Part shown: in pieces, positions 8,325-28,535 of the stretch
Layout of the letters: each line of letters opens with the position of its first letter
How positions within the stretch are numbered: position 1 is the first letter of the stretch
Assembly: GCA_044892505.1 (NCBI GenBank)
Contig: CM097883.1
Location: 73,904,159 to 73,945,905, forward strand
Length of the DNA stretch: 41,747 nucleotides
Direction: 5' to 3'
Source: Schmidtea nova
Lineage: Eukaryota
Position numbers and translations under genes: made by a program
Notes under the pieces: generated by a model
The model's input: only the letters and a program-made list of their open reading frames with translations
Database searches by the model: none
What the model was told of the DNA's origin: nothing

Positions 8325-9475
8325 TACGTTTAAAAAAAAACATTTCAAGAAATTTTAATTTAAAAGTTTTGTAATTTAATTAACACAAAAAAAATAGTTT
8401 ACTATTTGTCTGGAATTCAAAATTTTAAAACAATAAATTTCTTTTTAAAAATAATTTTACATAATAATTTTAATTATCCAATTTAATTTTATAATATACC
8501 AAAAATTCAAGCAAACATTCAAGACAAAAGTGTTCATAGCATTTTGCATATTAAATTTCGGATTCAATGATCTTATCAATCACGCTTCATATATAACACA
8601 TAAATATTTACCAACTCTTTTAGTCGTCCTTGATTCAAGAACTCAAGTATATAGATGACAAACAGTCTCTCATCAAAATATACATTGTTGTACTCATCAT
8701 ATTTAAATTAATAAACAAGATTCATGCACATTATAACCGNNNNNNNNNNNNNNNNNNNNNNNNNNNNNNNNNNNNNNNNNNNNNNNNNNNNNNNNNNNNN
8801 NNNNNNNNNNNNNNNNNNNNNNNNNNNNNNNNNNNNNNNNNNNNNNNNNNNNNNNNNNNNNNNNNNNNNNNNNNNNNNNNNNNNNNNNNCCTAATTGGGT
8901 TTTTGTTAGTTGTATGTGTGAAGGAGTAACAGTTGTTTGTTAAGGAGAATTTGTACGAACCCAAAAGAGTCTCCCAAAACTTGTTGTGGAGACAATTGGG
9001 GTGCCTGTGTTTGTAAGGAAGTATTTGCAATGAATTAAATAAGTTTTATAAAATGAATAAAAATTAAATTTTACAATAAATATATTCTAATAAACAGGAT
9101 AATAAAAAATCAAGAAAAAGTTACTTTTGTGTGTGTGTAAACGCAGGGAAAATATATTTACTGGAATAGGATCTTTTGATAGTTAGCTTGAAAGTTTTTT
9201 ATATAGCTTCTTTTAATATTTTCAGATTCGATAAAATAATATTTTATTTAGTCTGGTTGAATTGTTGGATTGTTGTTCTTTGGTTAAATATTTCTTTAAT
9301 TAAAATACGGAAGATCCTCGCCAACTTTTGGCTTATTATGATTGCTAGTTAATATTGTTTTCTTTTCCAGTCTTTGCTTCTTTACAATTTACGATATACA
9401 AACTAGTTTTCAGCTTTATTATTATTTTAATAAAAATCAATTTTTTTAATTTCTGTTTTCATAGCTTACTATAGT

Positions 9476-10137: not shown

Positions 10138-11196
10138 TTAGTTGTTGTGGTATGGCTTAATTCTTCTAAGGTTGATTCTTATTTTGGTGTTGTCTTTTAT
10201 TATTGTTGCTACATTTTTATTAATTTCAAGCAATCTGAAAGGGCCTTCGTATTTTGGTTCGAAACCTTTGGTGAAGGGCTTTTTTATTAATACGTAGTCT
10301 GTTGTTAGAACTACTTTTCCATCCATTTCAGAGTTAGCTCTCTTTTTGAGGATTCCTTTTAATTTCTTTTCTGCTCTTTCGTTGTTTGTGCTGGTTGCTT
10401 GTTTGTTGGTTTCCGCGTTTTCGGTTGTATTGTTTTTAATTGTTGGGAGATTTGATTCTCTGCCGAATACTTTGTATGCTGGGCTTTCGTTGTCAGTTGA
10501 GTTTGGCGTGTTTCTTAGGCCCAATAAGATTGTCGGGAGTTGACTTAGCCAATTTCTGTCGTCTGCTTTGGTGCGGATACTTTCCTTTAGTGTTCTGTGC
10601 AATCTCTCGATTTTTCCATTTGCTTGAGGGTTGTAAGCTGTTGTGCGGTTTCTTTTGATGTTGTATTTGTTGCACAGGGTACTGAATAATTCTGATTCGA
10701 ACTGTCTCCCTTGGTCTGTTATTAATACTTTTGGTTGACCGTAGCGAGCTATCCAATTTAGCTCGAGCTTGTTACATATGTTCTGGGCGGATGTTTCCTT
10801 TAGTGGGATGATTTCGAACCAGTTAGTTTTCCTGTCGATGATTGTGAGTAGGTAGTTGTACCCGTTGTTTGGTGGTAACGGTCCTACTATGTCGATGTGA
10901 ATCCTCTCGAAAGGTTGACTGCTGGGAAAATTTACTTTCTGTGTTGTTGGTTTCTTTGATATTTTGTTGATTTGGCAATCTTTGCATGTTTTTACGAAAC
11001 TTTTGATTTCCTTTCTCATATTTGGCCATATGTATCTGTTGTGAATTATTTCGAAAGTGGCTTTGTTACCTGGATGGCTTATGTCATGAATTTTCGAAAT
11101 ACACGATTTCCTAAACTCTTTTGGTAAGAGTATTCTTGGTGTGTTTTCGTTGCTGACGTCGTTCCTATAGTAAGCTATTTGAATAAAATAATTCAA
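10138..11196 (-). CDS. Ty3/Gypsy integrase (C-terminal part of Pol), N-terminally truncated
   Basis: HHCC zinc finger (IHDISHPG...CKDC), catalytic core IHIDIVGPL / ITDQGRQFES / NGKIERLHRTLK, and GPF module (YEGPFRLL). Confidence 0.92.
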   Translation of the reverse strand: MNYFIQIAYYRNDVSNENTPRILLPKEFRKSCISKIHDISHPGNKATFEIIHNRYIWPNMRKEIKSFVKTCKDCQINKISKKPTTQKVNFPSSQPFERIHIDIVGPLPPNNGYNYLLTIIDRKTNWFEIIPLKETSAQNICNKLELNWIARYGQPKVLITDQGRQFESELFSTLCNKYNIKRNRTTAYNPQANGKIERLHRTLKESIRTKADDRNWLSQLPTILLGLRNTPNSTDNESPAYKVFGRESNLPTIKNNTTENAETNKQATSTNNERAEKKLKGILKKRANSEMDGKVVLTTDYVLIKKPFTKGFEPKYEGPFRLLEINKNVATIIKDNTKIRINLRRIKPYHNN

Positions 11197-12318: not shown

Positions 12319-13408
12319 CACCAGTTTTCGTTGATTAAAAGTAACTATGATACAAGTAGGTGTGTAAATCTACTTGTTACTCATAGTTACTTTGTTTTAA
12401 TTTTTTGTGATACATTTTTATGTAGCTATTTATTTTTCATTTAGCCATTTTTTAAAAATGGCTATCAGGTAATTTTATTTATTTAGATATCTTTTAAGGT
12501 TTCTGTTTTGATTTTACAATGATATAAGATCACTACAGAAGCTTTGAAAGTTTATCTATATTCATCAATATTATTTTATTTTATATTTATTAGCTTTTAG
12601 AAAAATATGATTTTTTATGAATTTTTTTGGAAGTATTTTACATTAAACGTAAGTAAAAATATTTTTTAACAATAGTTTATTAATGAAATTCCATTATATT
12701 TGTTCTTGGCTTATTTTTATTTATTATTAAATAATTTCTAGGAAATCATGATTTTTTAACATTTTTTTGGGAATTATTTTCATTTAACGTAAGTTAAAAA
12801 ATCATTTTTAATTAATAATTATTATAATTATTTCTAATTTTGAAATATTTTTTGGATATTCCAAGAAATAATTTAATTAAGCTTAATTTTTTATTTCAAG
12901 AACAGCCAAATTTTATCGTCCTGTATTATATGAGACTTCAAAATGATCCAAATTGCAGAGTAAATATGCTTAATTGTCTATAATTTGAAAATAATTAGAC
13001 GAAATTATTTTTTGGCTACTGAAAAAAGGGAAAATTTTGTCATATAAATTTTGTAAATATATGAAATTTTATATTAAAATAAAACTTACGATGTTATTTA
13101 TCCATTTTCTAGACAACTCCCTTAGAAAATATTCCAAAAATCTACCTAAAAATCATATTTTAAAAATAAATTAATTAATTATAAGACTTTTAAACGCGTA
13201 AAAAAATGTACCCTTAAAAGTTTGCATGCAATTTTCATTGTGTGTTGTGTTTGTGTGCATAATTTATTTTTTCTCATAGATTGTCTACCACATACTAAAA
13301 CTTTTAAACGACGTAAAATCAACTGTTAACATCAACGTAAGTTATCATTTTCTATTGGTTATTTATTTTTTATATTATAGATTTACTTTTATCGAACGAA
13401 AACTGGTG
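12319..13408 (-). mobile_element. Non-autonomous, diverged relative of the DD28E Tc1/IS630-like element (1090 bp)
   Basis: TA|CACCAGTTTTCGTT...AACGAAAACTGGTG|TA (14-bp perfect TIR). Interior aligns by eye to both subterminal regions of 14947-18989 (AGCCATTTT..AAAATGGCT..CAGGTAATTTT..GATCACTA.AGAAGCTTT; TTGTGTTTGTGTG..TTGTCTAC.ACATA) and keeps a decayed transposase N-terminal remnant (RLIIFKL vs RKIIYKF). Confidence 0.8.
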
Positions 13409-14289
13409 TATATATATATATATATATATATTTATAGCAAAATTTTCTTTTTCATTCACATCAATTAAACAATATTTCTATCAAAGTTTTTCAGCTTTGT
13501 TTCACTGTCATTTGAAACAATCAAATCTGAATATACAGCTCTCTGTATATTTTCAATTTTACACATTGAAAAATAAGTTTTGATTTAATTTAATTTTTCA
13601 TTAACATTACATAACAATTAATTAATAATTTCATACTTTTACAAACGAAAATTAAATTCTAAATAATAAAACTAATAATTTTTTAATTATCTTTTGGTTT
13701 CTTCTTTGATCTCTTTTCTTATTCAATAATTTTCATATTAACTTTTTTTAAAACTATTGACCAAAGTTTTTTTTGGTTGTAAGTAATAAGATGTGAGCAC
13801 ACTGGCTTCATCGAGGAAGCAATGAGTCATGACTATGACTCATTAATTGGATAAGGCATGAGCGAGTCTTTTTGTTATGACTCATGGCCTTTATTCTACA
13901 GCGTGTTAAACACGTCGTGTCAAGGTCATTAGATTTTTAAAATAATTTTATGTTTTTTTAAAGAGGTTATAAGCTCACTAGCTGAACTGGTAATAGCTTC
14001 TCAAAAGCTACAATGAAGGCTACAAGTTGTCATGTTATTGTTTCTATATACCCAAAAAGTGCATCGGATAAGGACGCAAACTGCCAAAGTCGAGAAATCT
14101 TTTCATTTTACAAAGATATTTTGGATCATCCCGATTATTTGACCCATTTCGATATCAACCCGATTTTTTGACCCAAAAATTTTTTTATAAATAAATTATA
14201 ACATATTATTGTTTTAAATAAATTAATAATAAATAAATAATAATAATAATTGTAATAATAGTAATAATAAAAATAATAATAAAAATTAT

Positions 14290-14500
14290 TATTATCAATA
14301 ATTCCCATAATGATGTTTATAGATCAAATTATTTTTTATAAACAATAACAATAAAGGTAAAGGCTGTAATGATAGAGGCTGTGACGAAATATTGTGTTAT
14401 TGTTTATAAAAAAAATTTTGATCTATAGTCATCATTATGAGAATTATTGATAATAATAATAAAAAAGATCAAAGGTGAAAAAAGATAATTATGATAATAA
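14290..14500. repeat. Palindromic repeat family copy, paired arms with rearranged centre
   Basis: TTATCAATAATTCCCATAATGATG..TATAGATCAAA... then inverted ...TTTTGATCTATAGTCATCATTATGAGAATTATTGATAAT...AAAGATCAAAGGTGAAAAAAGATAATTATGAT. Confidence 0.8.
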
Positions 14501-15280
14501 TAATAATAATAATATCATTTTTATTTAATTTTTATCCTACCCAATAGGTCAAAAAACAGCTTGGTCCAATATTTTGGAGACTCCTCTCTCACAGCAACAA
14601 AAGACATTTTGTAAGATTCAGCATTAGAAAAAATATTCTCAGAAAATATTTTTTGATACGATCCTTCCTTCAACTCGAAATGGGAAGCGAAGATTTTTCC
14701 TTTATATTATAAAAACTTGGAAACCTGTTGTTTTAATCTATCTGTTGTATCTCATCAAATGATTGACATATTGTCCAAGCAAAATGTTTGTTCAGTTCAG
14801 AAAAGATTTAAAAAAAATATTTTGTGAATTTCATCAAAATCTTTGTTCCATGCTGTGCTTATCCAATCAGATTTGTATTTGTATGCCGAACAAGTACTGC
14901 AATGTCTTTGTTAAACAAGTACGTAATGTGTCTCATAAAACTGGTACACCGTGTTTCATTGGATATGGCGACCTATAATACAGGTGAGTGATATACATCA
15001 CGAGTTATTATTAGTCATTAATTCAAAATTTGTTGGAATTAGCCATTTTAAAATGGCTTTCAGGTAATTTTTGTAATTAGGATAACTTTTAAGTCTTTTA
15101 TTTTGATCGCATAATGTTATGAGATCACTATAGAAGCTTTAAAAGGTTATCTTTATTCATCAATTTTATTTTTATTTAATTTTTAAATAATTAGTAGAAA
15201 ATGTTTATGATATTATGGAATTATTAACATCAAAGGTAAGTAAAAATTCAATTCGAACTAATATTTATTTGATAAACACA

Positions 15281-16702
15281 TTAATCTCCAAATATTTCAA
15301 TTTTCCGAAAACATTTAGAAAAAAATCGGCGAACATGTAAGAAAAAGTTTTCCAAATCTTTATAATCATCTTTGTTTAATTCGTCTTCAAGAGCTGTTTT
15401 CACCAAACAAAATCTGTCTTGGAAAGACATTGTGGAGAAGCCATTTGATCTTGATATTGTCTTCCTTAAACTGCATTTTATTTTGCTAAATAAACTTTCG
15501 ATTGGGTTGAGGAAAGGGCTGTATGGTGGTAAATTTACAACGAAATTGTTTTCTGATATTACTCCACCATGTATTGAGGCATTATCATGAATTAAGTGGT
15601 ATCCTGTACCATCTAATTTTGACGTTAATTCTTGAATGAAAAGTTGGTAACTTTCTTTTTTGAAAGATCCAACTATAAATTTGTGATGTACTGGTCCTTT
15701 TAAGCCAATTGCAAGAACCAGTGACATATTTGAGCCTCGGTTAGTGGGTACAATTTGATAAAGTCTTTCACCTTTCTTCTTCCTTCCCAGATTTTGGCCT
15801 GACCATGAATTAAATCCACATTCGTCAATGTAAATTAATTTTTTGTCTTCCCAAGCTTCGTCTAAAAAGCGAGTTACATACTGTAACCTTAACTCGAGTA
15901 CGCGGTCTGAATTTCGAGCAGCTACACATGGCCTTATTTTTTTTAATGTAATTAGGTTCCTGTTCAAAAACCTAAAAATTGTCGCTCTTGATACTTGGCA
16001 ATTAAATTCATTGAGGAATTTTCTCATTTCCTCTAAGGTTGCACCAACGTTGTTTTCTACAAAATCTAACAACTTAATCCCTGTTTCTTCTGAAATTCGA
16101 GGCTTGCTACCACCTCTTGTGCTTTCTGGTAGGTGGCCATATTTTTCAAATTTATAAATTATTTTTCTTATAGAATTTTTTGTTAGGCCAAGTAAGCTTC
16201 CCAAATGGAAGTAATCTTGTTTATTTTCCTTTGCGTTTATGATTCTTGCTTTGTCGATATCTGAAATCCTATAAAAATCAAATAACTTTTTAAATATTTA
16301 TTATTTCATCTTACGATTTGCGAACATTTTTTCGGATATCAAATGAAATGTGGTTGGACGATGTCCCTGGAATATCTGAAAGGCTAAGCCCATAATAAAT
16401 ATTTTAATAAATAAAAAAGGTGATACCATTTTCCTAATTCATCTTCACGAAATGCCATTGTTTCCACTGAATTTTCTGAAAAACTGGGAAAATATAAAAA
16501 TTTTATGACTTAATTTACATTACTTACGATGATATTTCATCTTTTTCACGAAATGGTATTGTTTCCAGTGAATTGTCTGAAAAACTGGGAAAATATAAAT
16601 TTTTCAATACTTAAATTATAATACTTACGATGATATTTCATCATTTTCGCGGAAAGTCAGTGTAGATCCATCAGATCCAATTATCGAAATTTTATTTTCC
16701 AT
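15281..16702 (-). CDS. DD28E Tc1/IS630-like transposase, 5 predicted exons, 414 aa (exons 16702-16629, 16584-16528, 16483-16427, 16383-16315, 16268-15281)
   Basis: Catalytic motifs LIYIDECGFN, LIHDNASIH, LPPYSPFLNPIE; HTH-like N-terminal region (RGGSKPRI, GATLEEMR). Four GT-AG introns of 44, 44, 43 and 46 nt, all phase 2, give a continuous frame from the ATG at 16702. The transposase call is secure; the exon model is inferred. Confidence 0.85.
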
Positions 16703-16921
16703 ATTTATTTTCAATTTTTCTGCTGATAAAAATTATATATGGTAGCCATATTGAATAAAACAAAACACACCCATAAAAGTTACCATCTGTTTTTTTCTAT
16801 GTTTTGTGTTTGTGTGTAATTATTTTTTTTCTTACCTTTTGTCTACGACATAATAAATCGCCATTTTCAGTAAAACAGCAATGAATTAGGTACAGGTAGG
16901 TGTGTATTTTTCTATAATATA

Positions 16922-18942
16922 CACCGTGTTTCATTGGATATGGCGACCTATAATACAGGTGGATGATATACATCACGAGTTATTATTAGTCATTAATTCA
17001 AAATTTGTTGGAATTAGCCATTTTAAAATGGCTTTCAGGTAATTTTTGTAATTAGGATAACTTTTAAGTCTTTTATTTTGATCGCATAATGTTATGAGAT
17101 CACTATAGAAGCTTTAAAAGGTTATCTTTATTCATCAATTCTATTTTTATTTAATTTTTAAATAATTTGTAGAAAATGTTTATGATATTATGGAATTATT
17201 AACATCAAAGGTAAGTAAAAATTCAATTCGAACTAATATTTATTTGATAAACACATTAATCTCCAAATATTTCAATTTTCCGAAAACATTTAGAAAAAAA
17301 TCGGCGAACATGTAAGAAAAAGTTTTCCAAATCTTTATAATCATCTTTGTTTAATTCGTCTTCAAGAGCTGTTTTCACCAAACAAAATCTGTCTTGGAAA
17401 GACATTGTGGAGAAGCCATTTGATCTTGATATTGTCTTCCTTAAACTGCATTTTATTTTGCTAAATAAACTTTCGATTGGGTTGAGGAAAGGGCTGTATG
17501 GTGGTAAATTTACAACGAAATTGTTTTCTGATATTACTCCACCATGTATTGAGGCATTATCATGAATTAAGTGGTATCCTGTACCATCTAATTTTGAAGT
17601 TAATTCTTGAATGAAAAGTTGGTAACTTTCTTTTTTGAAAGATCCAACTATAAATTTGTGATGTACTGGTCCTTTTAAGCCAATTGCAAGAACCAGTGAC
17701 ATATTTGAGCCTCGGTTAGTGGGTACAATTTGATAAAGTCTTTCACCTTTCTTCTTCCTTCCCAGATTTTGGCCTGACCATGAATTAAATCCACATTCGT
17801 CAATGTAAATTAATTTTTTGTCTTCCCAAGCTTCGTCTAAAAAGCGAGTTACATACTGTAACCTTAACTCGAGTACGCGGTCTGAATTTCGAGCAGCTAC
17901 ACATGGCCTTATTTTTTTTAATGTAATTAGGTTCCTGTTCAAAAACCTAAAAATTGTCGCTCTTGATACTTGGCAATTAAATTCATTGAGGAATTTTCTC
18001 ATTTCCTCTAAGGTTGCACCAACATTGTTTTCTACAAAATCTAACAACTTAATCCCTGTTTCTTCTGAAATTCGAGGCTTGCTACCACCGATTGTGCTTT
18101 CTGGTAGGTGGCCATATTTTTCAAATTTATAAATTATTTTTCTTATAGAATTTTTTGTTAGGCCAAGTAAGCTTCCCAAATGGAAGTAATCTTGTTTATT
18201 TTCCTTTGCGTTTATGATTCTTGCTTTGTCGATATCTGAAATCCTATAAAAATCAAATAACTTTTTAAATATTTATTATTTCATCTTACGATTTGCGAAC
18301 ATTTTTTCGGATATCAAATGAAATGTGGTTGGACGATGTCCCTGGAATATCTGAAAGGCTAAGCCCATAATAAATATTTTAATAAATAAAAAAGGTGATA
18401 CCATTTTCCTAATTCATCTTCACGAAATGCCATTGTTTCCACTGAATTTTCTGAAAAACTGGGAAAATATAAAAATTTTATGACTTAATTTACATTACTT
18501 ACGATGATATTTCATCTTTTTCACGAAATGGTATTGTTTCCTGTGAATTGTCTGAAAAACTGGGAAAATATAAATTTTTCAATACTTAAATTATAACACT
18601 TACGATGATATTTCATCATTTTCGCGGAAACTCAGTGTAGATCCATCAGATCCAATTATCGAAATTTTATTTTCCATATTTATTTTCAATTTTTCTGCTG
18701 ATAAAAATTATATATGGTAGCCATATTGAATAAAACAAGACACACCCATAAAAGTTACCATCTGTTTTTTTCTATGTTTTGTGTTTGTGTGTAATTATTT
18801 TTTTTTCTTACCTTTTGTCTACGACATAATAAATCGCCATTTTCAGTAAAACAGCAATGAATTAGGTACAGGTAGGTGTGTATTTTTCTATAATATAAGC
18901 TATTTAATTATTATAGGTCGCCATATCCAGTGAAACCTGGTG
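16922..18942 (-). mobile_element. Tc1/IS630-superfamily DNA transposon, inner nested copy (2021 bp)
   Basis: Same TIRs (16922-16954, 18910-18942); TA at 16920-16921 and 18943-18944; inserted just inside the right TIR of the outer copy. Confidence 0.92.
17256..18677 (-). CDS. DD28E Tc1/IS630-like transposase, second copy (exons 18677-18604, 18559-18503, 18458-18402, 18358-18290, 18243-17256)
   Basis: Offset 1975 bp from the first copy; all splice sites conserved; few amino-acid changes (R>I in ESTRGG, L>Q in exon 2, T>S in exon 1). Confidence 0.85.
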
Positions 18943-20435
18943 TAAGCTATTTGATTATTATAGGTCGCCATATCCAGTGAAACCTGGTGTATAAATACTT
19001 AGAAATTTTAACAAATATGTTTTGAAGTGCATCAAGAAAATTTTATAATTTCTCTATTGAATAAAGACAATGTTATATCTAGCCTAAAATTCTTTATAAC
19101 GGATGATGAAGCTGCTTTCGAAAAGAAACTAATTGATTTTTCGTGGATCTTGAACCAAAAAATTGTTTTGGGCAGAAAAAACGCTTTTATAAAAACGTAT
19201 TCGATATACAATTTGAAGATCAAATGAAATGCAGTCGAATTATCATAGGATTTCTTTATATAGAGAAAATTTTGGAGATATTGGGCATTCATTATGAAAG
19301 TCATTTTTAATGATCTTTAGAGGTAAATTAATGTATATAATTATAATAATGACTTCATATCTCAGATGAGACTAAATGAAATGACTTTATGGATACAGAA
19401 TAATAGATCTTGGCAGAAATCGGTCTGGCTCAAAAGGAAAGACGAAGATGACTGAAAGGCGGAAGAAATCGTCATTTATTTGACTGAATTAACTTTTAGA
19501 TTATCGAGTCTTTATGTAGATTTTAACATTGAGTTTTGTAAATAAATTTTATCAGCTTTTTATTCATATAATACTATTTTTGTTGACAAGTACAATAATC
19601 ATCAACACATTTTATCAAATCGCTAGTATTTATTAGATTCTATTTGCTTCAGGTAGATCATTAAGATCATCAAAATGTTCATCAAATTTTATAAACTACT
19701 ATTTTCTTCAGCTATTTCATGAGATTCATTAAATAATTCTTCTGAAAATTTTTCATCACAAAACTCATAATTTTTCGTCATATTGATTAATAAATCTTAT
19801 CGTTCCATATGCAAAATCCGATATTGTTTTAATATTTTAAATAAACCTTTAATATACACTTACATTTTAAATTTAAATAATTGACCTTTGTTTGTATTTA
19901 AAATATTTTAAGCAAATATTTTATCAAGTTTGGTAAAAATATTTTAAAATACCACAACGTAAGATATTTATTTTCTGATTGGTTGATACTGAGTCACTTA
20001 ATTATTTTGTTTTGTAACTATCCAAATTCTCATTGATTTGTAAATAAAGTATGTTTTTTCACCATACAAAATTCAATTTTTGAAAATTATTAAAATAAAT
20101 CTGTTTAAAAATGGTGTAAATGATACGGGATATCCGATGGGTTTCCGAATTTCATTAATAAGGAACAAATTAGTTGATATATAAAATTTATTGAATTCGA
20201 ATTTTGTAATTTAAGAACAATATATATGTATTAAAATTTAAATAAATCTGAATCTCTTTATTATCATATTTTTATTGTAAAAATATCAACAAATTCTCCC
20301 TCACAACCAAAAATAGTTTGATTTGTCAAAATAATAAAATGATTGATTTAAATTATAATAATTATTAGTTATAACATGAAACTATTAAAAGTAAAATGAT
20401 AGTAGATTTGATGAAGGTTTATACGTTGCTGTTTA

Positions 20436-21545: not shown

Positions 21546-21684
21546 ATATCATAATTATCTTTTTTCACCTTTGATCTTTTTTTATTATTATTATCAATAA
21601 TTCTCATAATGACTATAGATCAAAATTTTTTTTTATAAACAATAACACAATATTTCGGCACAGCCTTTATCAAGTGTGTATTTC
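21546..21684 (+). repeat. Palindromic repeat family, single full-length arm (139 bp, used as reference)
   Basis: ATATCATAATTATCTTTTTTCACCTTTGATC...GACTATAGATCAAAA...AACAATAACACAATATTTCGGCACAGCCTTTATCAAGTGTGTATTTC; recurs about ten times in the window. Confidence 0.85.
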
Positions 21685-22834
21685 ATTAATTAATTAAATT
21701 AAAATGTTAATTTTTATTAATAATTTAAATATATACAAGTTTTAAATTTTTTATGTAATAGATAATTTATAAGAAATTACAAAATAAACGATAAAAATGT
21801 AGCCTAATTAAATAAAAGAAATATCCTGATTTTCCAATATTTTTCCGATTTTCTTCTTTCGACCTTCGGTTCATGTAGTAAAGGGGGAGTTCGCAAAATA
21901 TCTTTCAAANNNNNNNNNNNNNNNNNNNNNNNNNNNNNNNNNNNNNNNNNNNNNNNNNNNNNNNNNNNNNNNNNNNNNNNNNNNNNNNNNNNNNNNNNNN
22001 NNNNNNNNNNNNNNNNNNNNNNNNNNNNNNNNNNNNNNNNNNNNNNNNNNNNNNNNNNNNNNNNNNNNNNNNNNNNNNNNNNNNNNNNNNNNNNNNNNNN
22101 NNNNNNNNNNNNNNNNNNNNNNNNNNNNNNNNNNNNNNNNNNNNNNNNNNNNNNNNNNNNNNNNNNNNNNNNNNNNNNNNNNNNNNNNNNNNNNNNNNNN
22201 NNNNNNNNNNNNNNNNNNNNNNNNNNNNNNNNNNNNNNNNNNNNNNNNNNNNNNNNNNNNNNNNNNNATTTTCTTTTATTATATTATAATTTATTGTATA
22301 AATTGCTTGAAATACAATAATCAATAAAATGTATTGAAAATAAATATTCACGATATTATCAGATTTAAATTTCGGCTTTTCGCTTANNNNNNNNNNNNNN
22401 NNNNNNNNNNNNNNNNNNNNNNNNNNNNNNNNNNNNNNNNNNNNNNNNNNNNNNNNNNNNNNNNNNNNNNNNNNNNNNNNNNNNNNNNNNNNNNNNNNNN
22501 NNNNNNNNNNNNNNNNNNNNNNNNNNNNNNNNNNNNNNNNNNNNNNNNNNNNNNNNNNNNNNNNNNNNNNNNNNNNNNNNNNNNNNNNNNNNNNNNNNNN
22601 NNNNNNNNNNNNNNNNNNNNNNNNNNNNNNNNNNNNNNNNNNNNNNNNNNNNNNNNNNNNNNNNNNNNNNNNNNNNNNNNNNNNNNNNNNNNNNNNNNNN
22701 NNNNNNNNNNNNNNNNNNNNNNNNNNNNNNNNNNNNNNNNNNNNNNNNNNNNNNNNNNNNNNNNNNNNNNNNNNNNNNNNNNNNNNNNNNCACTAAAATA
22801 ATTAAAAGAAAACGCCAATCCAAATATATATTTT

Positions 22835-22875: not shown

Positions 22876-23259
22876 TACTCAATCTTACATCCAAATATAA
22901 ATCAAATAAATCGATTTTTTCAAACGAATTAGTATTAATTTTTTAAAATAAAATATATATTTTAAATTCCATATTATAGTTGAAAAATTTAAATCGATTA
23001 AAATTTTTTNNNNNNNNNNNNNNNNNNNNNNNNNNNNNNNNNNNNNNNNNNNNNNNNNNNNNNNNNNNNNNNNNNNNNNNNNNNNNNNNNNNNNNNNNNN
23101 NNNNNNNNNNNNNNNNNNNNNNNNNNNNNNNNNNNNNNNNNNNNNNNNNNNNNNNNNNNNNNNNNNNNNNNNNNNNNNNNNNNNNNNNNNNNNNNNNNNN
23201 NNNNNNNNNNNNNNNNNNNNNNNNNNNNNNNNNNNNNNNNNNNNNNNNNNNNNNNNNNT

Positions 23260-25349: not shown

Positions 25350-25541
25350 NNNNNNNNNNNNNNNNNNNNNNNNNNNNNNNNNNNNNNNNNNNNNNNNNNN
25401 NNNNNNNNNNNNNNNNNNNNNNNNNNNNNNNNNNNNNNNNNNNNNNNNNNNNNNNNNNNNNNNNNNNNNNNNNNNNNNNNNNNNNNNNNNNNNNNNNNNN
25501 NNNNNNNNNNNNNNNNNNNNNNNNNNNNNNNNNNNNNNNNN

Positions 25542-25701: not shown

Positions 25702-27468
25702 TTAATTTTTTTGTGCGAATTGAATGTTGATGGACGGTTTGTATTTTTTTATGAAAAAAGTCTCGGAAGCTAATCTTTGTAATGAATTTTTGAATCCCTC
25801 TTGTAGGATCTGGCATTTTGTTTCTTCTATAGATGGAGTTGTTTTATGTACTTTTTCCCAGTGTTCGTAATAATTACTGGTTTTGATTTTAGTATGTTCA
25901 TTAAGTCGGGTGCGAAAAGTTCTATGTGTTTCTCCTATGTAAGTAGCGTCACATTTTTGACAAGAAAGTTTATATACTATATTTTTGGAAAAGCAAAAGC
26001 ATCGGGTTGTGGAACGGCAAAGACATTTATGTTTGGAGATGTTGGAAATTGGTGGCTTTCGGAGTTGTGATTTTAACGGTGCGGAGGTTATGAATGTTGG
26101 ACGGATGTGGATAGGCAAATCTGTTTGATTAAAAATGTTGGTGATTTTGTTGGCTGTAGTGTCATTTAGGAAAGGTAATCTTAGATATGTTGTGTGTTTG
26201 TTATTGTTATTGTGTTTCTGGCGTTTTCTATTGTTGCGTTTATTGTGGTATGGTTCGTTAAGGAAGTGTTTCTTTACAAAGTCTTCAGGGTATCCATTTT
26301 GGAGGAATCGTATTTTGAAGTTTTCTAATGTTTCTTGTATTTTGTTTGCGTCTGAACAGTTTCTTATGGCTCTTTTTCTTTCTCCAATTAGTAATGCGAT
26401 TTTGCGTTGATGTGGAACGTGGCTTTTCCATGGGAGGATATGACCGCTATGTAAACTTTTAGAATATAGCTCGGTGTTTGCATTTAGTGTATCTTGGCCT
26501 TTTGTGAAACTTACCATGGTATCTAAAAACGGTATTTTACCTTCTGTGTTCGGTGTTTCAAAAGTGAATTGTATGTTGGTGTTAGTAGAATTTGCGTGTG
26601 ATAGGATTTGATTGAGAGGGATTGTGGAGACTATGAAGATGTCGTCGATGTATCGTTTCCAGAAAAGTATTTTGTCCCCAAAAAAAGATATGATCTTAGA
26701 TTCTATAAAGTTCATGTAGAAGATGGCTAAGATGGGAGAAAGGTTATTACCCATGGCTAATCCATGAATTTGTTTGAATGGTTTTTCTTTAATTATGACA
26801 GTATCTGAATTTATTGCTAATTTTAGAAGTTCTATAAAGTCTTGTTTAGTTAAGTCTGCGAGGTCAGTATTGGCTTTATGAGTTTCAAAGAAAGAAGCTG
26901 CGATATCGAAAATGTTATTCTCTCCGTGAAGAGGAATAGATCCGTAAAGATTGGAAACGTCAAGAGATCCCCAGAAGTACTGTTGTTCTGAGTTTAACGG
27001 AAGAGACGTATTTGTTATTTCGGAGACGAATTCAGTTGTGTTTTTAAGATGAGAAGGAACCAAAGGCAAAAGTGTTTTTAGAATTTCTGAAAGAACTTTA
27101 GAAAGTGTTGTGGAAGGAGTGTCAACTGCAGATACAAGAGGTCTACCTTTTAAAGGACTTTTGTGATCTTTAGGTAACATAGTCATATTACTAGGTAAAG
27201 GCTCACTGCAGTTGCATTTTAAAAGTAAATCTTTGATTTGAAGGTTAATTTGTTTATTTGCAAGTGTTGAAAGTTTCTTATTGTATAAAATCTGAGTCGA
27301 TGCAGGTAAGATTATTTTGTTTATCGGTTCATAGTTCGAGAGATGTTCTTCAAATAGAGTATTGTGTTGTTCTGTGTCAAGGGCAATTAGTCGATTTGTT
27401 TTATCTGATGGAAGAATTGTGAAGTCTTTGGAATTCTTAATTTTCTTTATGTTTGAAGTGAAACACAA
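25702..27468 (-). CDS. Penelope-like element RT plus GIY-YIG endonuclease, 5'-truncated, uninterrupted frame (588 aa)
   Basis: PSDKTN, PKDHKSPLKGRPLVS, SLDVSNLYGSIP, GLAMGNNLSPILA, RYIDDIF, IPFLD; IVYKLSCQKCDATYIGETHRTFRTRLNEH; ends KYKPSINIQ. The N-terminus is a truncation point, not a true start. Confidence 0.93.
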   Translation of the reverse strand: MCFTSNIKKIKNSKDFTILPSDKTNRLIALDTEQHNTLFEEHLSNYEPINKIILPASTQILYNKKLSTLANKQINLQIKDLLLKCNCSEPLPSNMTMLPKDHKSPLKGRPLVSAVDTPSTTLSKVLSEILKTLLPLVPSHLKNTTEFVSEITNTSLPLNSEQQYFWGSLDVSNLYGSIPLHGENNIFDIAASFFETHKANTDLADLTKQDFIELLKLAINSDTVIIKEKPFKQIHGLAMGNNLSPILAIFYMNFIESKIISFFGDKILFWKRYIDDIFIVSTIPLNQILSHANSTNTNIQFTFETPNTEGKIPFLDTMVSFTKGQDTLNANTELYSKSLHSGHILPWKSHVPHQRKIALLIGERKRAIRNCSDANKIQETLENFKIRFLQNGYPEDFVKKHFLNEPYHNKRNNRKRQKHNNNNKHTTYLRLPFLNDTTANKITNIFNQTDLPIHIRPTFITSAPLKSQLRKPPISNISKHKCLCRSTTRCFCFSKNIVYKLSCQKCDATYIGETHRTFRTRLNEHTKIKTSNYYEHWEKVHKTTPSIEETKCQILQEGFKNSLQRLASETFFIKKYKPSINIQFAQKN

Positions 27469-27746: not shown

Positions 27747-28535
27747 NNNNNNNNNNNNNNNNNNNNNNNNNNNNNNNNNNNNNNNNNNNNNNNNNNNNNN
27801 NNNNNNNNNNNNNNNNNNNNNNNNNNNNNNNNNNNNNNNNNNNNNNNNNNNNNNNNNNNNNNNNNNNNNNNNNNNNNNNNNNNNNNNNNNNNNNNNNNNN
27901 NNNNNNNNNNNNNNNNTTGAAAAAGTTTTGATAAGAATCTTCAATAGAAAGAAGAATTACAAATTTAATAGTCATGCCTTTGAGTCTAGTCTTTCACTAG
28001 TCTTGCACTATAATTGTTAAACCTAGATAATGAAAATTACTTTCTAAGAATATCTCGTTTTAACATAAAAATTATAAGCAATTTTAAAAGATTTTTTATT
28101 GAAAGAAAATAACTTTGGAAAAGTCAAATGATCTCACTTACTTTAAAGATTTTATTAAAATGAAGTTTACTAGAATGCATTAGGTGATAGAGCCATTGTA
28201 ACCAATTTGTTAATTGGGAACCCAAGCGAACATATTTATCGAGCACCGAAATGTCGATATTTTTTAACAAGAATGTTATTATTTTTCATTTTATTTAAAG
28301 GAAAACTAATTTAAAATTAATTAATTAATATTGAAAATACAACACTGAAATATTCACTCTGTCAATCATTGGATTGAAAGTTATTTGGTGATTGTACAAG
28401 ATTCAATTTAAATTTACAGTTTAATTAAAATCACCTTTTTTTATTTTTTGGTATGTTTTGTGAAAATAAATAAATTTACCTTTTAATATAAAGCTGAATA
28501 CAATTTAAGTGTATATCAATAAGTTTCATAATTGC

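What the first reader, a model, noticed from the sequence alone, without database searches (positions are those of the whole stretch)
15497..15586. DD28E catalytic spacing in an intact Tc1/IS630-type transposase
Seen: between the second Asp (HD, 15584-15586) and the Glu (NPIE, 15497-15499) there are exactly 28 residues (NASIHGGVISENNFVVNLPPYSPFLNPI), identical in both copies, with all flanking motifs intact. Established: Tc1 is DD34E and described relatives are mostly DD34-38E. Inference: a 6-residue-shorter loop may define an undescribed family; I know of no DD28E group but could not search. The nested insertion with a perfect TA duplication shows the element was mobilised, by this enzyme or by a longer-spaced helper.
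Basis: partly seen in the sequence, partly recalled or inferred. Interest (0 to 1): 0.8.

Follow-up and report, generated by a model that had tools for sequence, protein, structure and literature searches.

The report
Short-linker (DD28E) Tc1/IS630-type transposon, nested pair
Two almost identical 2-kb copies of a Tc1/IS630-type "cut-and-paste" jumping gene, one inserted inside the other, encode an enzyme whose catalytic Asp-to-Glu linker is 28 residues, not the textbook 34. The short linker is real and is shared, at 27-30 residues, by the element's closest relatives, a lineage for which I found no name. It is a modest variation on a very well-known kind of element.

Summary
The second Asp (15584-15586) and the Glu (15497-15499) are separated by exactly 28 residues, identically in both copies, and all flanking motifs are intact.

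The protein is a genuine IS630/Tc1/mariner transposase:
- Pfam DDE_3 matches at 5.7e-17, and NCBIfam IS630 scores 110.6 bits against a cut-off of 100.
- The AlphaFold model (pLDDT 89) has Mos1, SETMAR and Sleeping Beauty as its best structural matches.

The short linker is not a private deletion. About 30 of the nearest relatives (30-47% identity), all unnamed metagenome or SRA contigs, have DD27E to DD30E. A profile search adds about 60 more DD30E proteins. Some of these are generically annotated in lobster and prawn. DD32-33E forms occur in echinoderms. Four other DD28E proteins turn up in other lineages. The triad is intact in 88 of 90 relatives with a spacing of 31 or less.

Structure prediction places the missing residues in the helix between strand 4 and strand 5 of the RNase H fold.

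No paper in the searchable library names a DD26-32E transposon group. "Undescribed family" is therefore plausible, but 28 itself is not a fixed signature.

The nested insertion with a TA duplication is confirmed. The 414-aa gene model is uncertain, because a 330-aa one-intron model fits the relatives better. Interest is modest.

The parts
14947..16919 (-). Outer copy (Y), main piece, from just after the nested insertion to the right terminal inverted repeat. It is flanked by TA at 14945-14946.
   Evidence: The right TIR core lies at 14947-14973. This piece matches the inner copy at 1965 of 1977 aligned bases, with one indel.
18945..18989 (-). Outer copy (Y), left-end piece: the first 45 nt of the left TIR region. 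The TA target duplication lies at 18990-18991.
   Evidence: It differs by 1 base from the same stretch of the inner copy. The two pieces were compared apart and never joined.
16922..18942 (-). Inner copy (X), a complete 2021-nt element nested in Y between the TA dinucleotides 18943-18944 and 16920-16921.
   Evidence: TIR cores lie at 18916-18942 and 16922-16948. The arms are 36-38 nt long and 92% complementary.
15281..16268 (-). Last exon of the transposase gene in copy Y, stop codon included. It holds the whole paired-like DNA-binding region and the DDE domain.
   Evidence: It is an open frame of 328 residues matching DDE_3, HTH_32 (weak) and NCBIfam IS630. AATAAA follows the stop.
17256..18243 (-). 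Last exon of the transposase gene in copy X.
   Evidence: It shows 1 residue and 4 base differences from copy Y, with no stops.
15461..15838 (-). DDE (RNase H-like) catalytic domain of copy Y, exon residues 144-269. D148 lies at 15824-15826, D228 at 15584-15586 and E257 at 15497-15499.
15497..15586 (-). The reported D-to-E stretch: 28 residues between the second Asp and the Glu. The equivalent stretch in copy X is 17472-17561.
15938..16267 (-). Bipartite paired-like helix-turn-helix DNA-binding region of copy Y (about residues 1-110), with a GGSKPR linker motif.
   Evidence: Pax6, Pax5, Prd and Sleeping Beauty PAI matches; six helices in the model.
16315..16702 (-). 5' region of the gene in copy Y. 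Model (a) has mini-exons at 16629-16702, 16528-16584, 16427-16483 and 16315-16383. Model (b) has its start codon at 16325-16327 and a single intron at 16261-16314.
   Evidence: Each exon was translated apart, and both models are in frame with the last exon. No RNA evidence is available.
12319..13408 (-). Non-autonomous relative of 1090 nt. It is TA-flanked, its TIRs start CACCAG, its subterminal regions are 72-77% like the full element, and it has no transposase ORF.
   Evidence: (I11, D3, D5). tblastn with the transposase finds only the two full copies.

Best explanation
This is a eukaryotic cut-and-paste DNA transposon of the IS630/Tc1/mariner group. It is present as two 99.4% identical copies of about 2.02 kb, one of which inserted into a TA 45 nt inside the left end of the other. 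Each copy has 36-38-nt terminal inverted repeats starting CACC, TA target duplications, and an intron-containing gene. The last exon of that gene encodes a paired-like bipartite DNA-binding domain followed by a compact D79-D28-E RNase H-type catalytic domain.

The element belongs to a lineage, unnamed as far as I could find, whose transposases have only 27-30 residues between the second Asp and the Glu. The missing residues correspond to the helix that normally lies between strand 4 and strand 5 of the fold. The strands and the helix that carry the three carboxylates are kept.

Inferred mechanism, from established Tc1/mariner enzymology: transposase dimers bind the TIRs through the paired-like domain, the DDE site cleaves both ends, and the excised element integrates at a TA. 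What is shown is the anatomy, the family membership, the spread of the short linker among relatives, the nested TA-flanked insertion, and a TA-flanked non-autonomous derivative in the same window. What is inferred is that this enzyme, and not a helper, is catalytically competent.
For: Family and fold:
- Pfam DDE_3 5.7e-17; NCBIfam IS630 110.6 bits against a cut-off of 100.
- A profile search of PDB finds Sleeping Beauty 5cr4 at 7e-12, Mos1 3hos at 3e-11 and Pax paired domains.
- The AF2 model has pLDDT 89.4, with Foldseek top matches Mos1, SETMAR and SB.

The short linker is shared:
- Linker lengths among 120 word-search relatives and 79 further profile hits are 27 (7 proteins), 28 (5, including the query), 29 (4), 30 (74), 31 (1), 32-33 (30) and 34 or more (79).
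- The nearest 24-30 relatives are all 27-30.
- The query sits in an all-short clade of at least 15 members in 194 of 200 bootstraps with the linker columns removed.
- The D-D-E triad is intact in 88 of 90 relatives with a spacing of 31 or less.

Structure: a DD34E relative (P0049) has helices 243-246 and 248-256 between D240 and strand 260-263. The window protein keeps only a 3-residue turn at 231-233 before strand 242-245.

Signs of past mobility:
- There are precise TA-TIR junctions at all six ends, and the copies differ by 12 mismatches and one indel in 1977 nt.
- A TA-flanked non-autonomous relative lies in the window.
- Complete relatives on other contigs (L002, L018, L019) also end TA-CACC...GGTG-TA.

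Eukaryotic host: no in-frame ATG lies in the last exon upstream of the DNA-binding domain, GT-AG introns of 43-54 nt are present, metazoan-type retroelement genes lie nearby, and 185,579 prokaryotic genomes gave only remote partial matches.
Against: - No direct evidence of catalysis or expression exists. The two copies differ too little (3 silent changes and 1 replacement in the last exon) to measure selection.
- The start of the protein is unresolved: 414-aa or 330-aa model.
- Exact clade boundaries are weak. The 24-member clade recurs in only 28 of 200 bootstraps, and NJ on about 172 columns does not resolve whether all short-linker lineages form one group.
- Named reference sequences of Tc1, Gambol, Hiker, Traveler and others could not be brought into the tree.
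- Repbase and Dfam were not searchable, so a curated consensus of this lineage may already exist there.
Confidence: 0.8

Rival explanations
1. The 28-residue spacing is a private six-codon deletion in an otherwise DD34E Tc1-like element. On this reading both copies are dead relics that were moved, if at all, by a full-length helper.
For: More distant relatives are mostly DD34E (67 of 199). Only two copies are visible in the window, and both could descend from one deleted ancestor.
Against: All of the nearest roughly 30 relatives (30-47% identity, independent contigs) have 27-30 residues. The association holds with the linker columns excluded. The triad and flanking motifs are conserved in 88 of 90 short-linker proteins. 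tblastn finds no other transposase of this group in the window.
Confidence: 0.04
2. The head-to-tail pair arose by tandem duplication, unequal recombination or an assembly artefact, and not by transposition of one copy into the other.
For: The two units lie in the same orientation with a 1975-nt period. Repeat-rich, AT-rich regions are prone to duplication and mis-assembly. Eight masked N runs show that the window is not fully resolved.
Against: The junctions are exactly those of an insertion. A full left TIR follows a TA, and a full right TIR is followed by the same TA, interrupting the outer copy 45 nt from its end. An unequal crossover between two copies would not create a second left TIR next to the first. 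The duplicated 45-nt stretches differ by one base and the bodies differ by 12 mismatches, which argues against a collapsed or duplicated assembly of a single copy.
Confidence: 0.07
3. The short-linker protein still binds DNA but is not a working transposase. Its role would be that of a regulator or a domesticated gene, and the elements would be mobilised in trans by another enzyme.
For: The helix removed from the linker lies in the catalytic core. No activity data exist for any DD27-30E protein. The N-terminal extension of the 414-aa model has no counterpart in relatives.
Against: The gene lies between intact TIRs in multiple near-identical copies, which is not the pattern of a domesticated single-copy gene. 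The triad is conserved across deeply diverged short-linker lineages, many of them on contigs that are complete TA-flanked elements. pogo-type transposases, reported as DD29-36D (PMC8472432), show that the wider group tolerates linkers of about 30.
Confidence: 0.09

Closest known systems
IS630/Tc1 family in the broad sense (Pfam DDE_3; NCBIfam NF033545 'IS630 family transposase')
   Same: It scores above the curated NCBIfam cut-off (110.6 against 100 bits) and matches DDE_3. It has a TA target duplication, short TIRs, a paired-like bipartite DNA-binding domain followed by a DDE domain, and the PPYSPFLNPIE motif around the Glu.
   Different: The second Asp to Glu spacing is 28 (27-30 in the nearest relatives) against 34-36 for IS630 and Tc1 as listed in PMC11544213 and PMC8533490. 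The host is eukaryotic and the gene has introns. No close relative was found in 185,579 prokaryotic genomes.
Tc1 proper / Sleeping Beauty (DD34E) and mariner Mos1 (DD34D), the structurally solved members
   Same: The fold is the same: Foldseek probability 1.0 with TM-scores, normalised to the target, of 0.54-0.75 for the catalytic-domain entries. The order of domains and the TA target are also the same.
   Different: Sequence identity over the structural alignment is only about 15-19%. A single-sequence search of PDB finds no transposase at all. The helix between strand 4 and strand 5 is reduced to one turn.
DD34E/Gambol, DD35E/Hiker and DD34E/Dici, the eukaryotic groups that also hit the IS630 domain
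   Same: Published Dici transposases hit NF033545 and are placed near Gambol and Hiker (PMC13469147). This search's more distant hits include DD34E proteins of Anopheles funestus and Mucorales and DD35E proteins of characiform fish. From memory of the literature, these plausibly belong to those groups.
   Different: Identity to these hits is only 26-31% and the linker is 6-7 residues shorter. Membership could not be tested because no named reference sequence could be brought in. The assignment of those hits to Gambol, Hiker or Dici is my inference, not a tool result.
Generically annotated DD30E proteins of decapod crustaceans (e.g. Homarus americanus KAG7165130.1, Macrobrachium nipponense XP_064100877.1) and DD32-33E proteins of echinoderms (e.g. 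Strongylocentrotus purpuratus XP_030846747.1)
   Same: These are the nearest named-organism relatives found with the clade profile (E 1e-102 to 1e-77). They share the short linker, the D80D spacing (decapods) and the same motifs.
   Different: They are about 29-30% identical to the window protein. In the NJ trees they fall in a neighbouring group, outside the window protein's own subgroup. They carry no family name.
pogo superfamily (DDxD; reported spacings about 29-36, e.g. DD30D)
   Same: The linker length is comparably short, which shows that the wider group tolerates about 30 residues.
   Different: In pogo the third catalytic residue is Asp, not Glu. Pfam DDE_1 and CENP-B-type DNA-binding domains are not matched here.

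Membership tests
IS630/Tc1/mariner (ITm) group | TA target-site duplication | tested here: met
   TA lies on both sides of the outer copy, the inner copy and the 1090-nt non-autonomous relative.
IS630/Tc1/mariner (ITm) group | Terminal inverted repeats bounding a single transposase gene | tested here: met
   The arms are 36-38 nt long and 92% complementary (I7-I10), with one gene per copy.
IS630/Tc1/mariner (ITm) group | N-terminal bipartite (paired-like) helix-turn-helix DNA-binding domain | tested here: met
   The profile matches Pax6, Pax5, Pax8 and Prd paired domains (2e-11 to 5e-9) and the SB PAI subdomain. The model has six helices in residues 3-103.
IS630/Tc1/mariner (ITm) group | RNase H-like DDE/D catalytic domain | tested here: met
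   DDE_3 5.7e-17. D148, D228 and E257 are invariant. Foldseek best matches are Mos1, SETMAR and SB.
IS630/Tc1/mariner (ITm) group | Demonstrated cut-and-paste activity | not testable with these tools
   There are only indirect signs: near-identical copies, a nested TA-flanked insertion and a non-autonomous derivative.
Tc1 family proper (DD34E) | 34 residues between the second Asp and the Glu | tested here: not met
   The spacing is 28 residues here and 27-30 in the nearest relatives.
Tc1 family proper (DD34E) | Placement inside the Tc1 clade with curated reference transposases | not testable with these tools
   No named reference sequences could be brought in. Sleeping Beauty is reached only with a profile (7e-12) and not with the single sequence.
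IS630 family (NCBIfam NF033545) | Score at or above the curated cut-off of the model | tested here: met
   110.6 bits against a cut-off of 100, over residues 6-270.
IS630 family (bacterial insertion sequences) | Prokaryotic host and an uninterrupted gene | tested here: not met
   The start codon is reachable only through GT-AG introns. Metazoan-type retroelements lie nearby. The scan of prokaryotic genomes gave only 26-41% partial matches.
pogo superfamily (DDxD) | Third catalytic residue Asp; DDE_1 domain; CENP-B-type DNA-binding domain | tested here: not met
   The third residue is Glu in an NPIE motif. Pfam gives DDE_3, not DDE_1, and there are no CENP-B-type matches.
Proposed short-linker lineage (DD27-30E; unnamed) | Linker of 27-30 residues, D79-80D spacing, and TA-CACC termini | tested here: met
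   The window element has D79D28E and termini TA-CACC...GGTG-TA. The same termini occur in L002, L018 and L019.
Proposed short-linker lineage (DD27-30E; unnamed) | Monophyly apart from all named families | tested here: inconclusive
   The query lies in an all-short clade of at least 15 members in 194 of 200 bootstraps. Exact boundaries are weak (28 of 200), and no named references are in the tree.

The most novel reading that the evidence does not exclude
The DD27-30E proteins, and perhaps the neighbouring DD30E decapod and DD32-33E echinoderm lineages, form a distinct ITm family that has not yet been named. It would have a minimal catalytic core lacking the helix between strand 4 and strand 5, would have been recently mobile in this AT-rich animal genome, and would be widespread in aquatic invertebrates and environmental DNA.
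Probability: 0.45. Interest if true: 0.45.

Novelty: new variant of a known kind. Interest (0 to 1): 0.35.

Why it matters
The spacing between the second Asp and the Glu/Asp is the label by which the field names Tc1/mariner families (DD34E, DD35E, DD36E, DD37E, DD38E and so on).

A lineage at DD27-30E would extend that range downwards. It would show that the helix between strands 4 and 5 of the RNase H fold can be dispensed with in this group.

It also adds to published evidence that spacing alone is an unreliable family marker, because 28 occurs here in at least two unrelated lineages.

In practice, these elements are currently annotated only as 'DDE superfamily endonuclease' or 'uncharacterized protein', so repeat libraries and gene sets of invertebrate genomes probably misfile them.

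This is a taxonomic and structural refinement of a very well-understood kind of element, not a new mechanism.

Tried and rejected
- **Single-sequence PDB search.** It returned only a weak paired-domain hit. A profile was needed.
- **Rfam and tRNA scans of the window.** Nothing found.
- **Exact search for the 20-nt TIR core in metagenome contigs.** No match, so no further copies of this very element were found.
- **Search of papers for the sample accessions of the closest contigs.** Nothing found, so their hosts stay unknown.
- **Search for extra internal transposase-binding repeats inside the element.** Allowing up to 5 mismatches to the TIR core, only the four TIR copies matched.
- **Translation of the flanks of the outer copy.** This tested whether it interrupts a gene. 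No convincing frame was seen.
- **Host identification.** The neighbouring integrase ORF points only to a metazoan, probably an ecdysozoan or another invertebrate. The species was not determined.
- **Alternative catalytic Glu giving DD34E.** Rejected, because residue 263 is not acidic.
- **Not run.** The large HMMER representative search was skipped because it is costly and carries no names, and the protein was not left open. A scan of viral contigs was left out so as not to fetch animal-virus contigs.
- **Spliced gene models.** These were never joined or searched as one sequence. Only the last exon, by reference, was used as a query, and the mini-exons were translated apart.
- **The two pieces of the outer copy.** They were never joined.
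- **The N runs.** They were left untouched.

Full report
**1. What is there**

The window is very AT-rich, 15-32% G+C in 2-kb steps, and full of repeats. On the minus strand between 14945 and 18991 lie two units of one element with a 1975-nt period.

The junctions, read directly, give this order:
- TA (18990-18991);
- the first 45 nt of a left end starting CACCAGG (18945-18989);
- TA (18943-18944);
- a complete element with both inverted repeats (inner copy X, 16922-18942, 2021 nt);
- TA (16920-16921);
- the rest of the outer copy Y (14947-16919), ending in the right inverted repeat;
- TA (14945-14946).

This is what insertion of X into a TA of Y produces, with the TA duplicated. X and the corresponding part of Y match at 1965 of 1977 aligned bases, with one indel. 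The two pieces of Y were compared apart and never joined.

**2. The gene**

The last exon (15284-16268 in Y, 17259-18243 in X) is open in both copies. It encodes 328 residues that differ at one position. It contains no in-frame ATG upstream of the DNA-binding region, so the start must come from upstream through splicing.

Two models are in frame (each exon was translated apart):
Four mini-exons (74, 57, 57 and 69 nt) plus the last exon give 414 codons. It uses the acceptors cccag, cccag, ttag and tatag. It adds an 86-residue N-terminal extension that no relative has. Two of its exon-plus-intron units are a 101-nt tandem duplication (D1).
- **Model (b).** An ATG at 16325-16327, four codons, then one 54-nt intron (gtaaga...atttcag) gives 330 codons. 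This is the length of the relatives (304-344 residues). Its N-terminus resembles theirs: compare the alignment, where relatives start about 5-20 residues before the conserved 'IDK' position.

I could not decide between the models without RNA data. Both keep the entire transposase core.

**3. The observation**

In the exon protein the catalytic residues are D148 (in IDECGF), D228 (in IHDNAS) and E257 (in NPIES). These are window positions 15824-15826, 15584-15586 and 15497-15499. There are 79 residues between the two Asp and 28 between D228 and E257. This is exactly as reported, and identical in copy X (17559-17561 and 17472-17474).

These residues are invariant columns in a 42-sequence alignment. 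Residue 263, which a 34-residue spacing would require to be acidic, is not acidic.

**4. What the protein is**

- Pfam: DDE_3 at 5.7e-17, with a weak HTH_32.
- NCBIfam: IS630 family transposase, 110.6 bits against a curated cut-off of 100.
- PDB, single sequence: only a weak paired-domain hit.
- PDB, profile of the protein and 41 relatives: the Sleeping Beauty catalytic domain (5cr4, 7e-12), Mos1 (3hos, 3e-11), SETMAR, and the paired domains of Pax6, Pax5, Pax8 and Prd.
- AlphaFold2 model built on that alignment: confident, mean pLDDT 89.4. Its best structural matches in PDB are Mos1 transpososomes, the SETMAR transposase domain and Sleeping Beauty.

Together with the TA duplications and the inverted repeats, every testable defining feature of the IS630/Tc1/mariner group is met.

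**5. Is the short linker private or shared?**

The word-based protein search returned 124 relatives at E of 0.001 or better, of which the best 120 were listed and analysed.

The anchors DN..H and LPPYSPFLNPIE make the count independent of alignment details. The nearest roughly 30 relatives have 27 (7 proteins), 28 (1), 29 (4) or 30 (19) residues. More distant ones have 32-36 residues, mostly 34.

I built neighbour-joining trees on about 175 catalytic-domain columns with the linker columns removed:
- The query falls in a 24-member clade that is entirely short.
- That exact clade recurs in only 28 of 200 bootstraps.
- The query lies in some all-short clade of at least 15 members in 194 of 200 bootstraps.

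A profile of the short clade retrieved 532 proteins at E of 1e-20 or better. Among the 79 new ones listed:
- 57 are DD30E. These include many generically annotated proteins of the lobster Homarus americanus and one of the prawn Macrobrachium nipponense.
- The DD32-33E forms include proteins of sea urchins and a brittle star.
- Three more are DD28E (P0252, P0256, P0264), with a different D85D spacing.

Over all 199 relatives, the D-D-E triad is intact in 88 of the 90 with a spacing of 31 or less.

So the short linker is a property of whole lineages and not a recent deletion. The number 28 itself is neither constant in the nearest clade nor unique to it.

A pattern-based scan of one genome from each of 185,579 prokaryotic species gave only remote partial matches (26-41% identity, with one 22-residue fragment at 77%). 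These came mostly from Chloroflexota and Methanobrevibacter.

Three relatives' contigs that contain complete elements (L002, L018, L019) end TA-CACC...GGTG-TA like the window element.

**6. What is missing structurally**

In the model of a DD34E relative (P0049, pLDDT 89.7), the second Asp (D240) is followed by helices 243-246 and 248-256, then strand 260-263, and then the helix carrying the Glu.

In the window protein, D228 is followed by a single turn (231-233), a short loop, strand 242-245, and the helix 251-273 carrying E257.

The six missing residues therefore correspond to the helix between strands 4 and 5 of the RNase H fold. The elements that hold the three carboxylates are retained. 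I could not measure carboxylate distances because model coordinates are not exposed.

**7. Literature**

'DD28E' as a transposon term is absent from the searchable library. Searches for DD26E to DD33E, and for 'mariner' combined with DD27 or DD28, found only two items:
- a partial DD31E IS630-like gene in a Wolbachia phage (PMC11544213);
- a DD33E variant of a pogo/Tigger element in bees (PMC8472432).

Current lists of families give DD34E/Tc1, DD35E/Traveler, DD36E/Incomer, DD37E/TRT, DD38E/Intruder, DD34D, DD37D, DD39D, DD41D, DDxD/pogo, DD34E/Gambol, Zator, TP36 and DD78-111E/Sailor (PMC8533490). More recent additions are DD35E/Hiker and DD34E/Dici (PMC13469147).

PMC11544213 also argues that the DDxE number is not conserved enough to define families.

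Subscription journals, Repbase and Dfam could not be searched.

**8. Other copies and context**

A 1090-nt TA-flanked element at 12319-13408 has inverted repeats starting CACCAG. Its subterminal regions are 72-77% identical to the full element, and it has no transposase frame. It is a non-autonomous relative, which is further indirect evidence that this group has moved in this genome.

The neighbouring retroelement genes are an integrase ORF at 10138-11196 and a reverse-transcriptase-like ORF at 25702-27468. The integrase's nearest named relatives are in Lepidoptera, Trichuris, spiders and shrimp. Together with the 43-54-nt GT-AG introns, this points to an invertebrate animal host. The species was not determined.

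**9. Verdict**

This is a member of a short-linker (DD27-30E) lineage of IS630/Tc1-type transposons for which I found no name. It is not a one-off deletion.
- It is not a 'DD28E family'. Relatives with similarly short linkers already sit, unnamed, in public protein sets.
- Whether they deserve family rank depends on a phylogeny with curated references, which I could not build.
- That the enzyme itself is active is inferred from intact frames, conserved triads, near-identical copies and a precise nested insertion. It is not shown.

It is a new variant of a very well-known kind of element, and the interest is modest.

Noticed in passing
window 10138-11196 (-): A 352-residue ORF carries an integrase zinc-binding H2C2 domain and an rve core, so it is part of an LTR-retrotransposon pol gene. 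Its nearest named relatives are in Lepidoptera, Trichuris suis, spiders and shrimp.
   Followed up: partly
window 25702-27468 (-): A 588-residue ORF gives a weak reverse-transcriptase (RVT_1) match. The surrounding 26-28 kb stretch has an unusually strong GC skew of +0.29.
   Followed up: no
window 14285-14496 and 21547-21732: An AT-rich, internally palindromic repeat of about 200 bp is present twice in inverted orientation, with arms up to 100% complementary. The two copies bracket the region that holds the transposon pair. It may be a MITE-like element or the ends of a larger one.
   Followed up: no
window 16439-16663 and 18414-18638: A tandem duplication with a 101-nt period lies in the 5' part of each transposon copy. 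In the 414-aa gene model it corresponds to one mini-exon plus one intron, repeated, and gives a repeated peptide motif. Its function is unknown.
   Followed up: partly
window 8740-8889, 21910-22267, 22387-22790, 23010-23258, 25350-25541, 27747-27916, 33784-33958, 39399-39710: There are eight runs of N, 2010 bases in all. Several ORFs listed around 22-24 kb and 39 kb run through them and mean nothing.
   Followed up: no
window 16108-16125 (copy Y) and the same place in copy X: The linker between the two helix-turn-helix halves carries GGSKPR, the same motif as in Pax/Prd paired domains (alignment). The only amino-acid difference between the two copies (Arg against Ile) lies just before it.
   Followed up: partly
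P0252, P0256, P0264 and P0021 (proteins from public assemblies): Four other proteins have exactly 28 residues between the second Asp and the Glu. They belong to at least two lineages other than the window protein's nearest group (D85D and D78D spacings, 29-39% identity), so this length has arisen more than once.
   Followed up: partly
L018 1783-3693 and L019 2-1915: A DD30E relative from JGI metagenomes has very long inverted repeats (about 330 nt, 90-98% complementary, with internal sub-repeats). The window element's repeats are 36-38 nt, so end architecture varies within the lineage.
   Followed up: no
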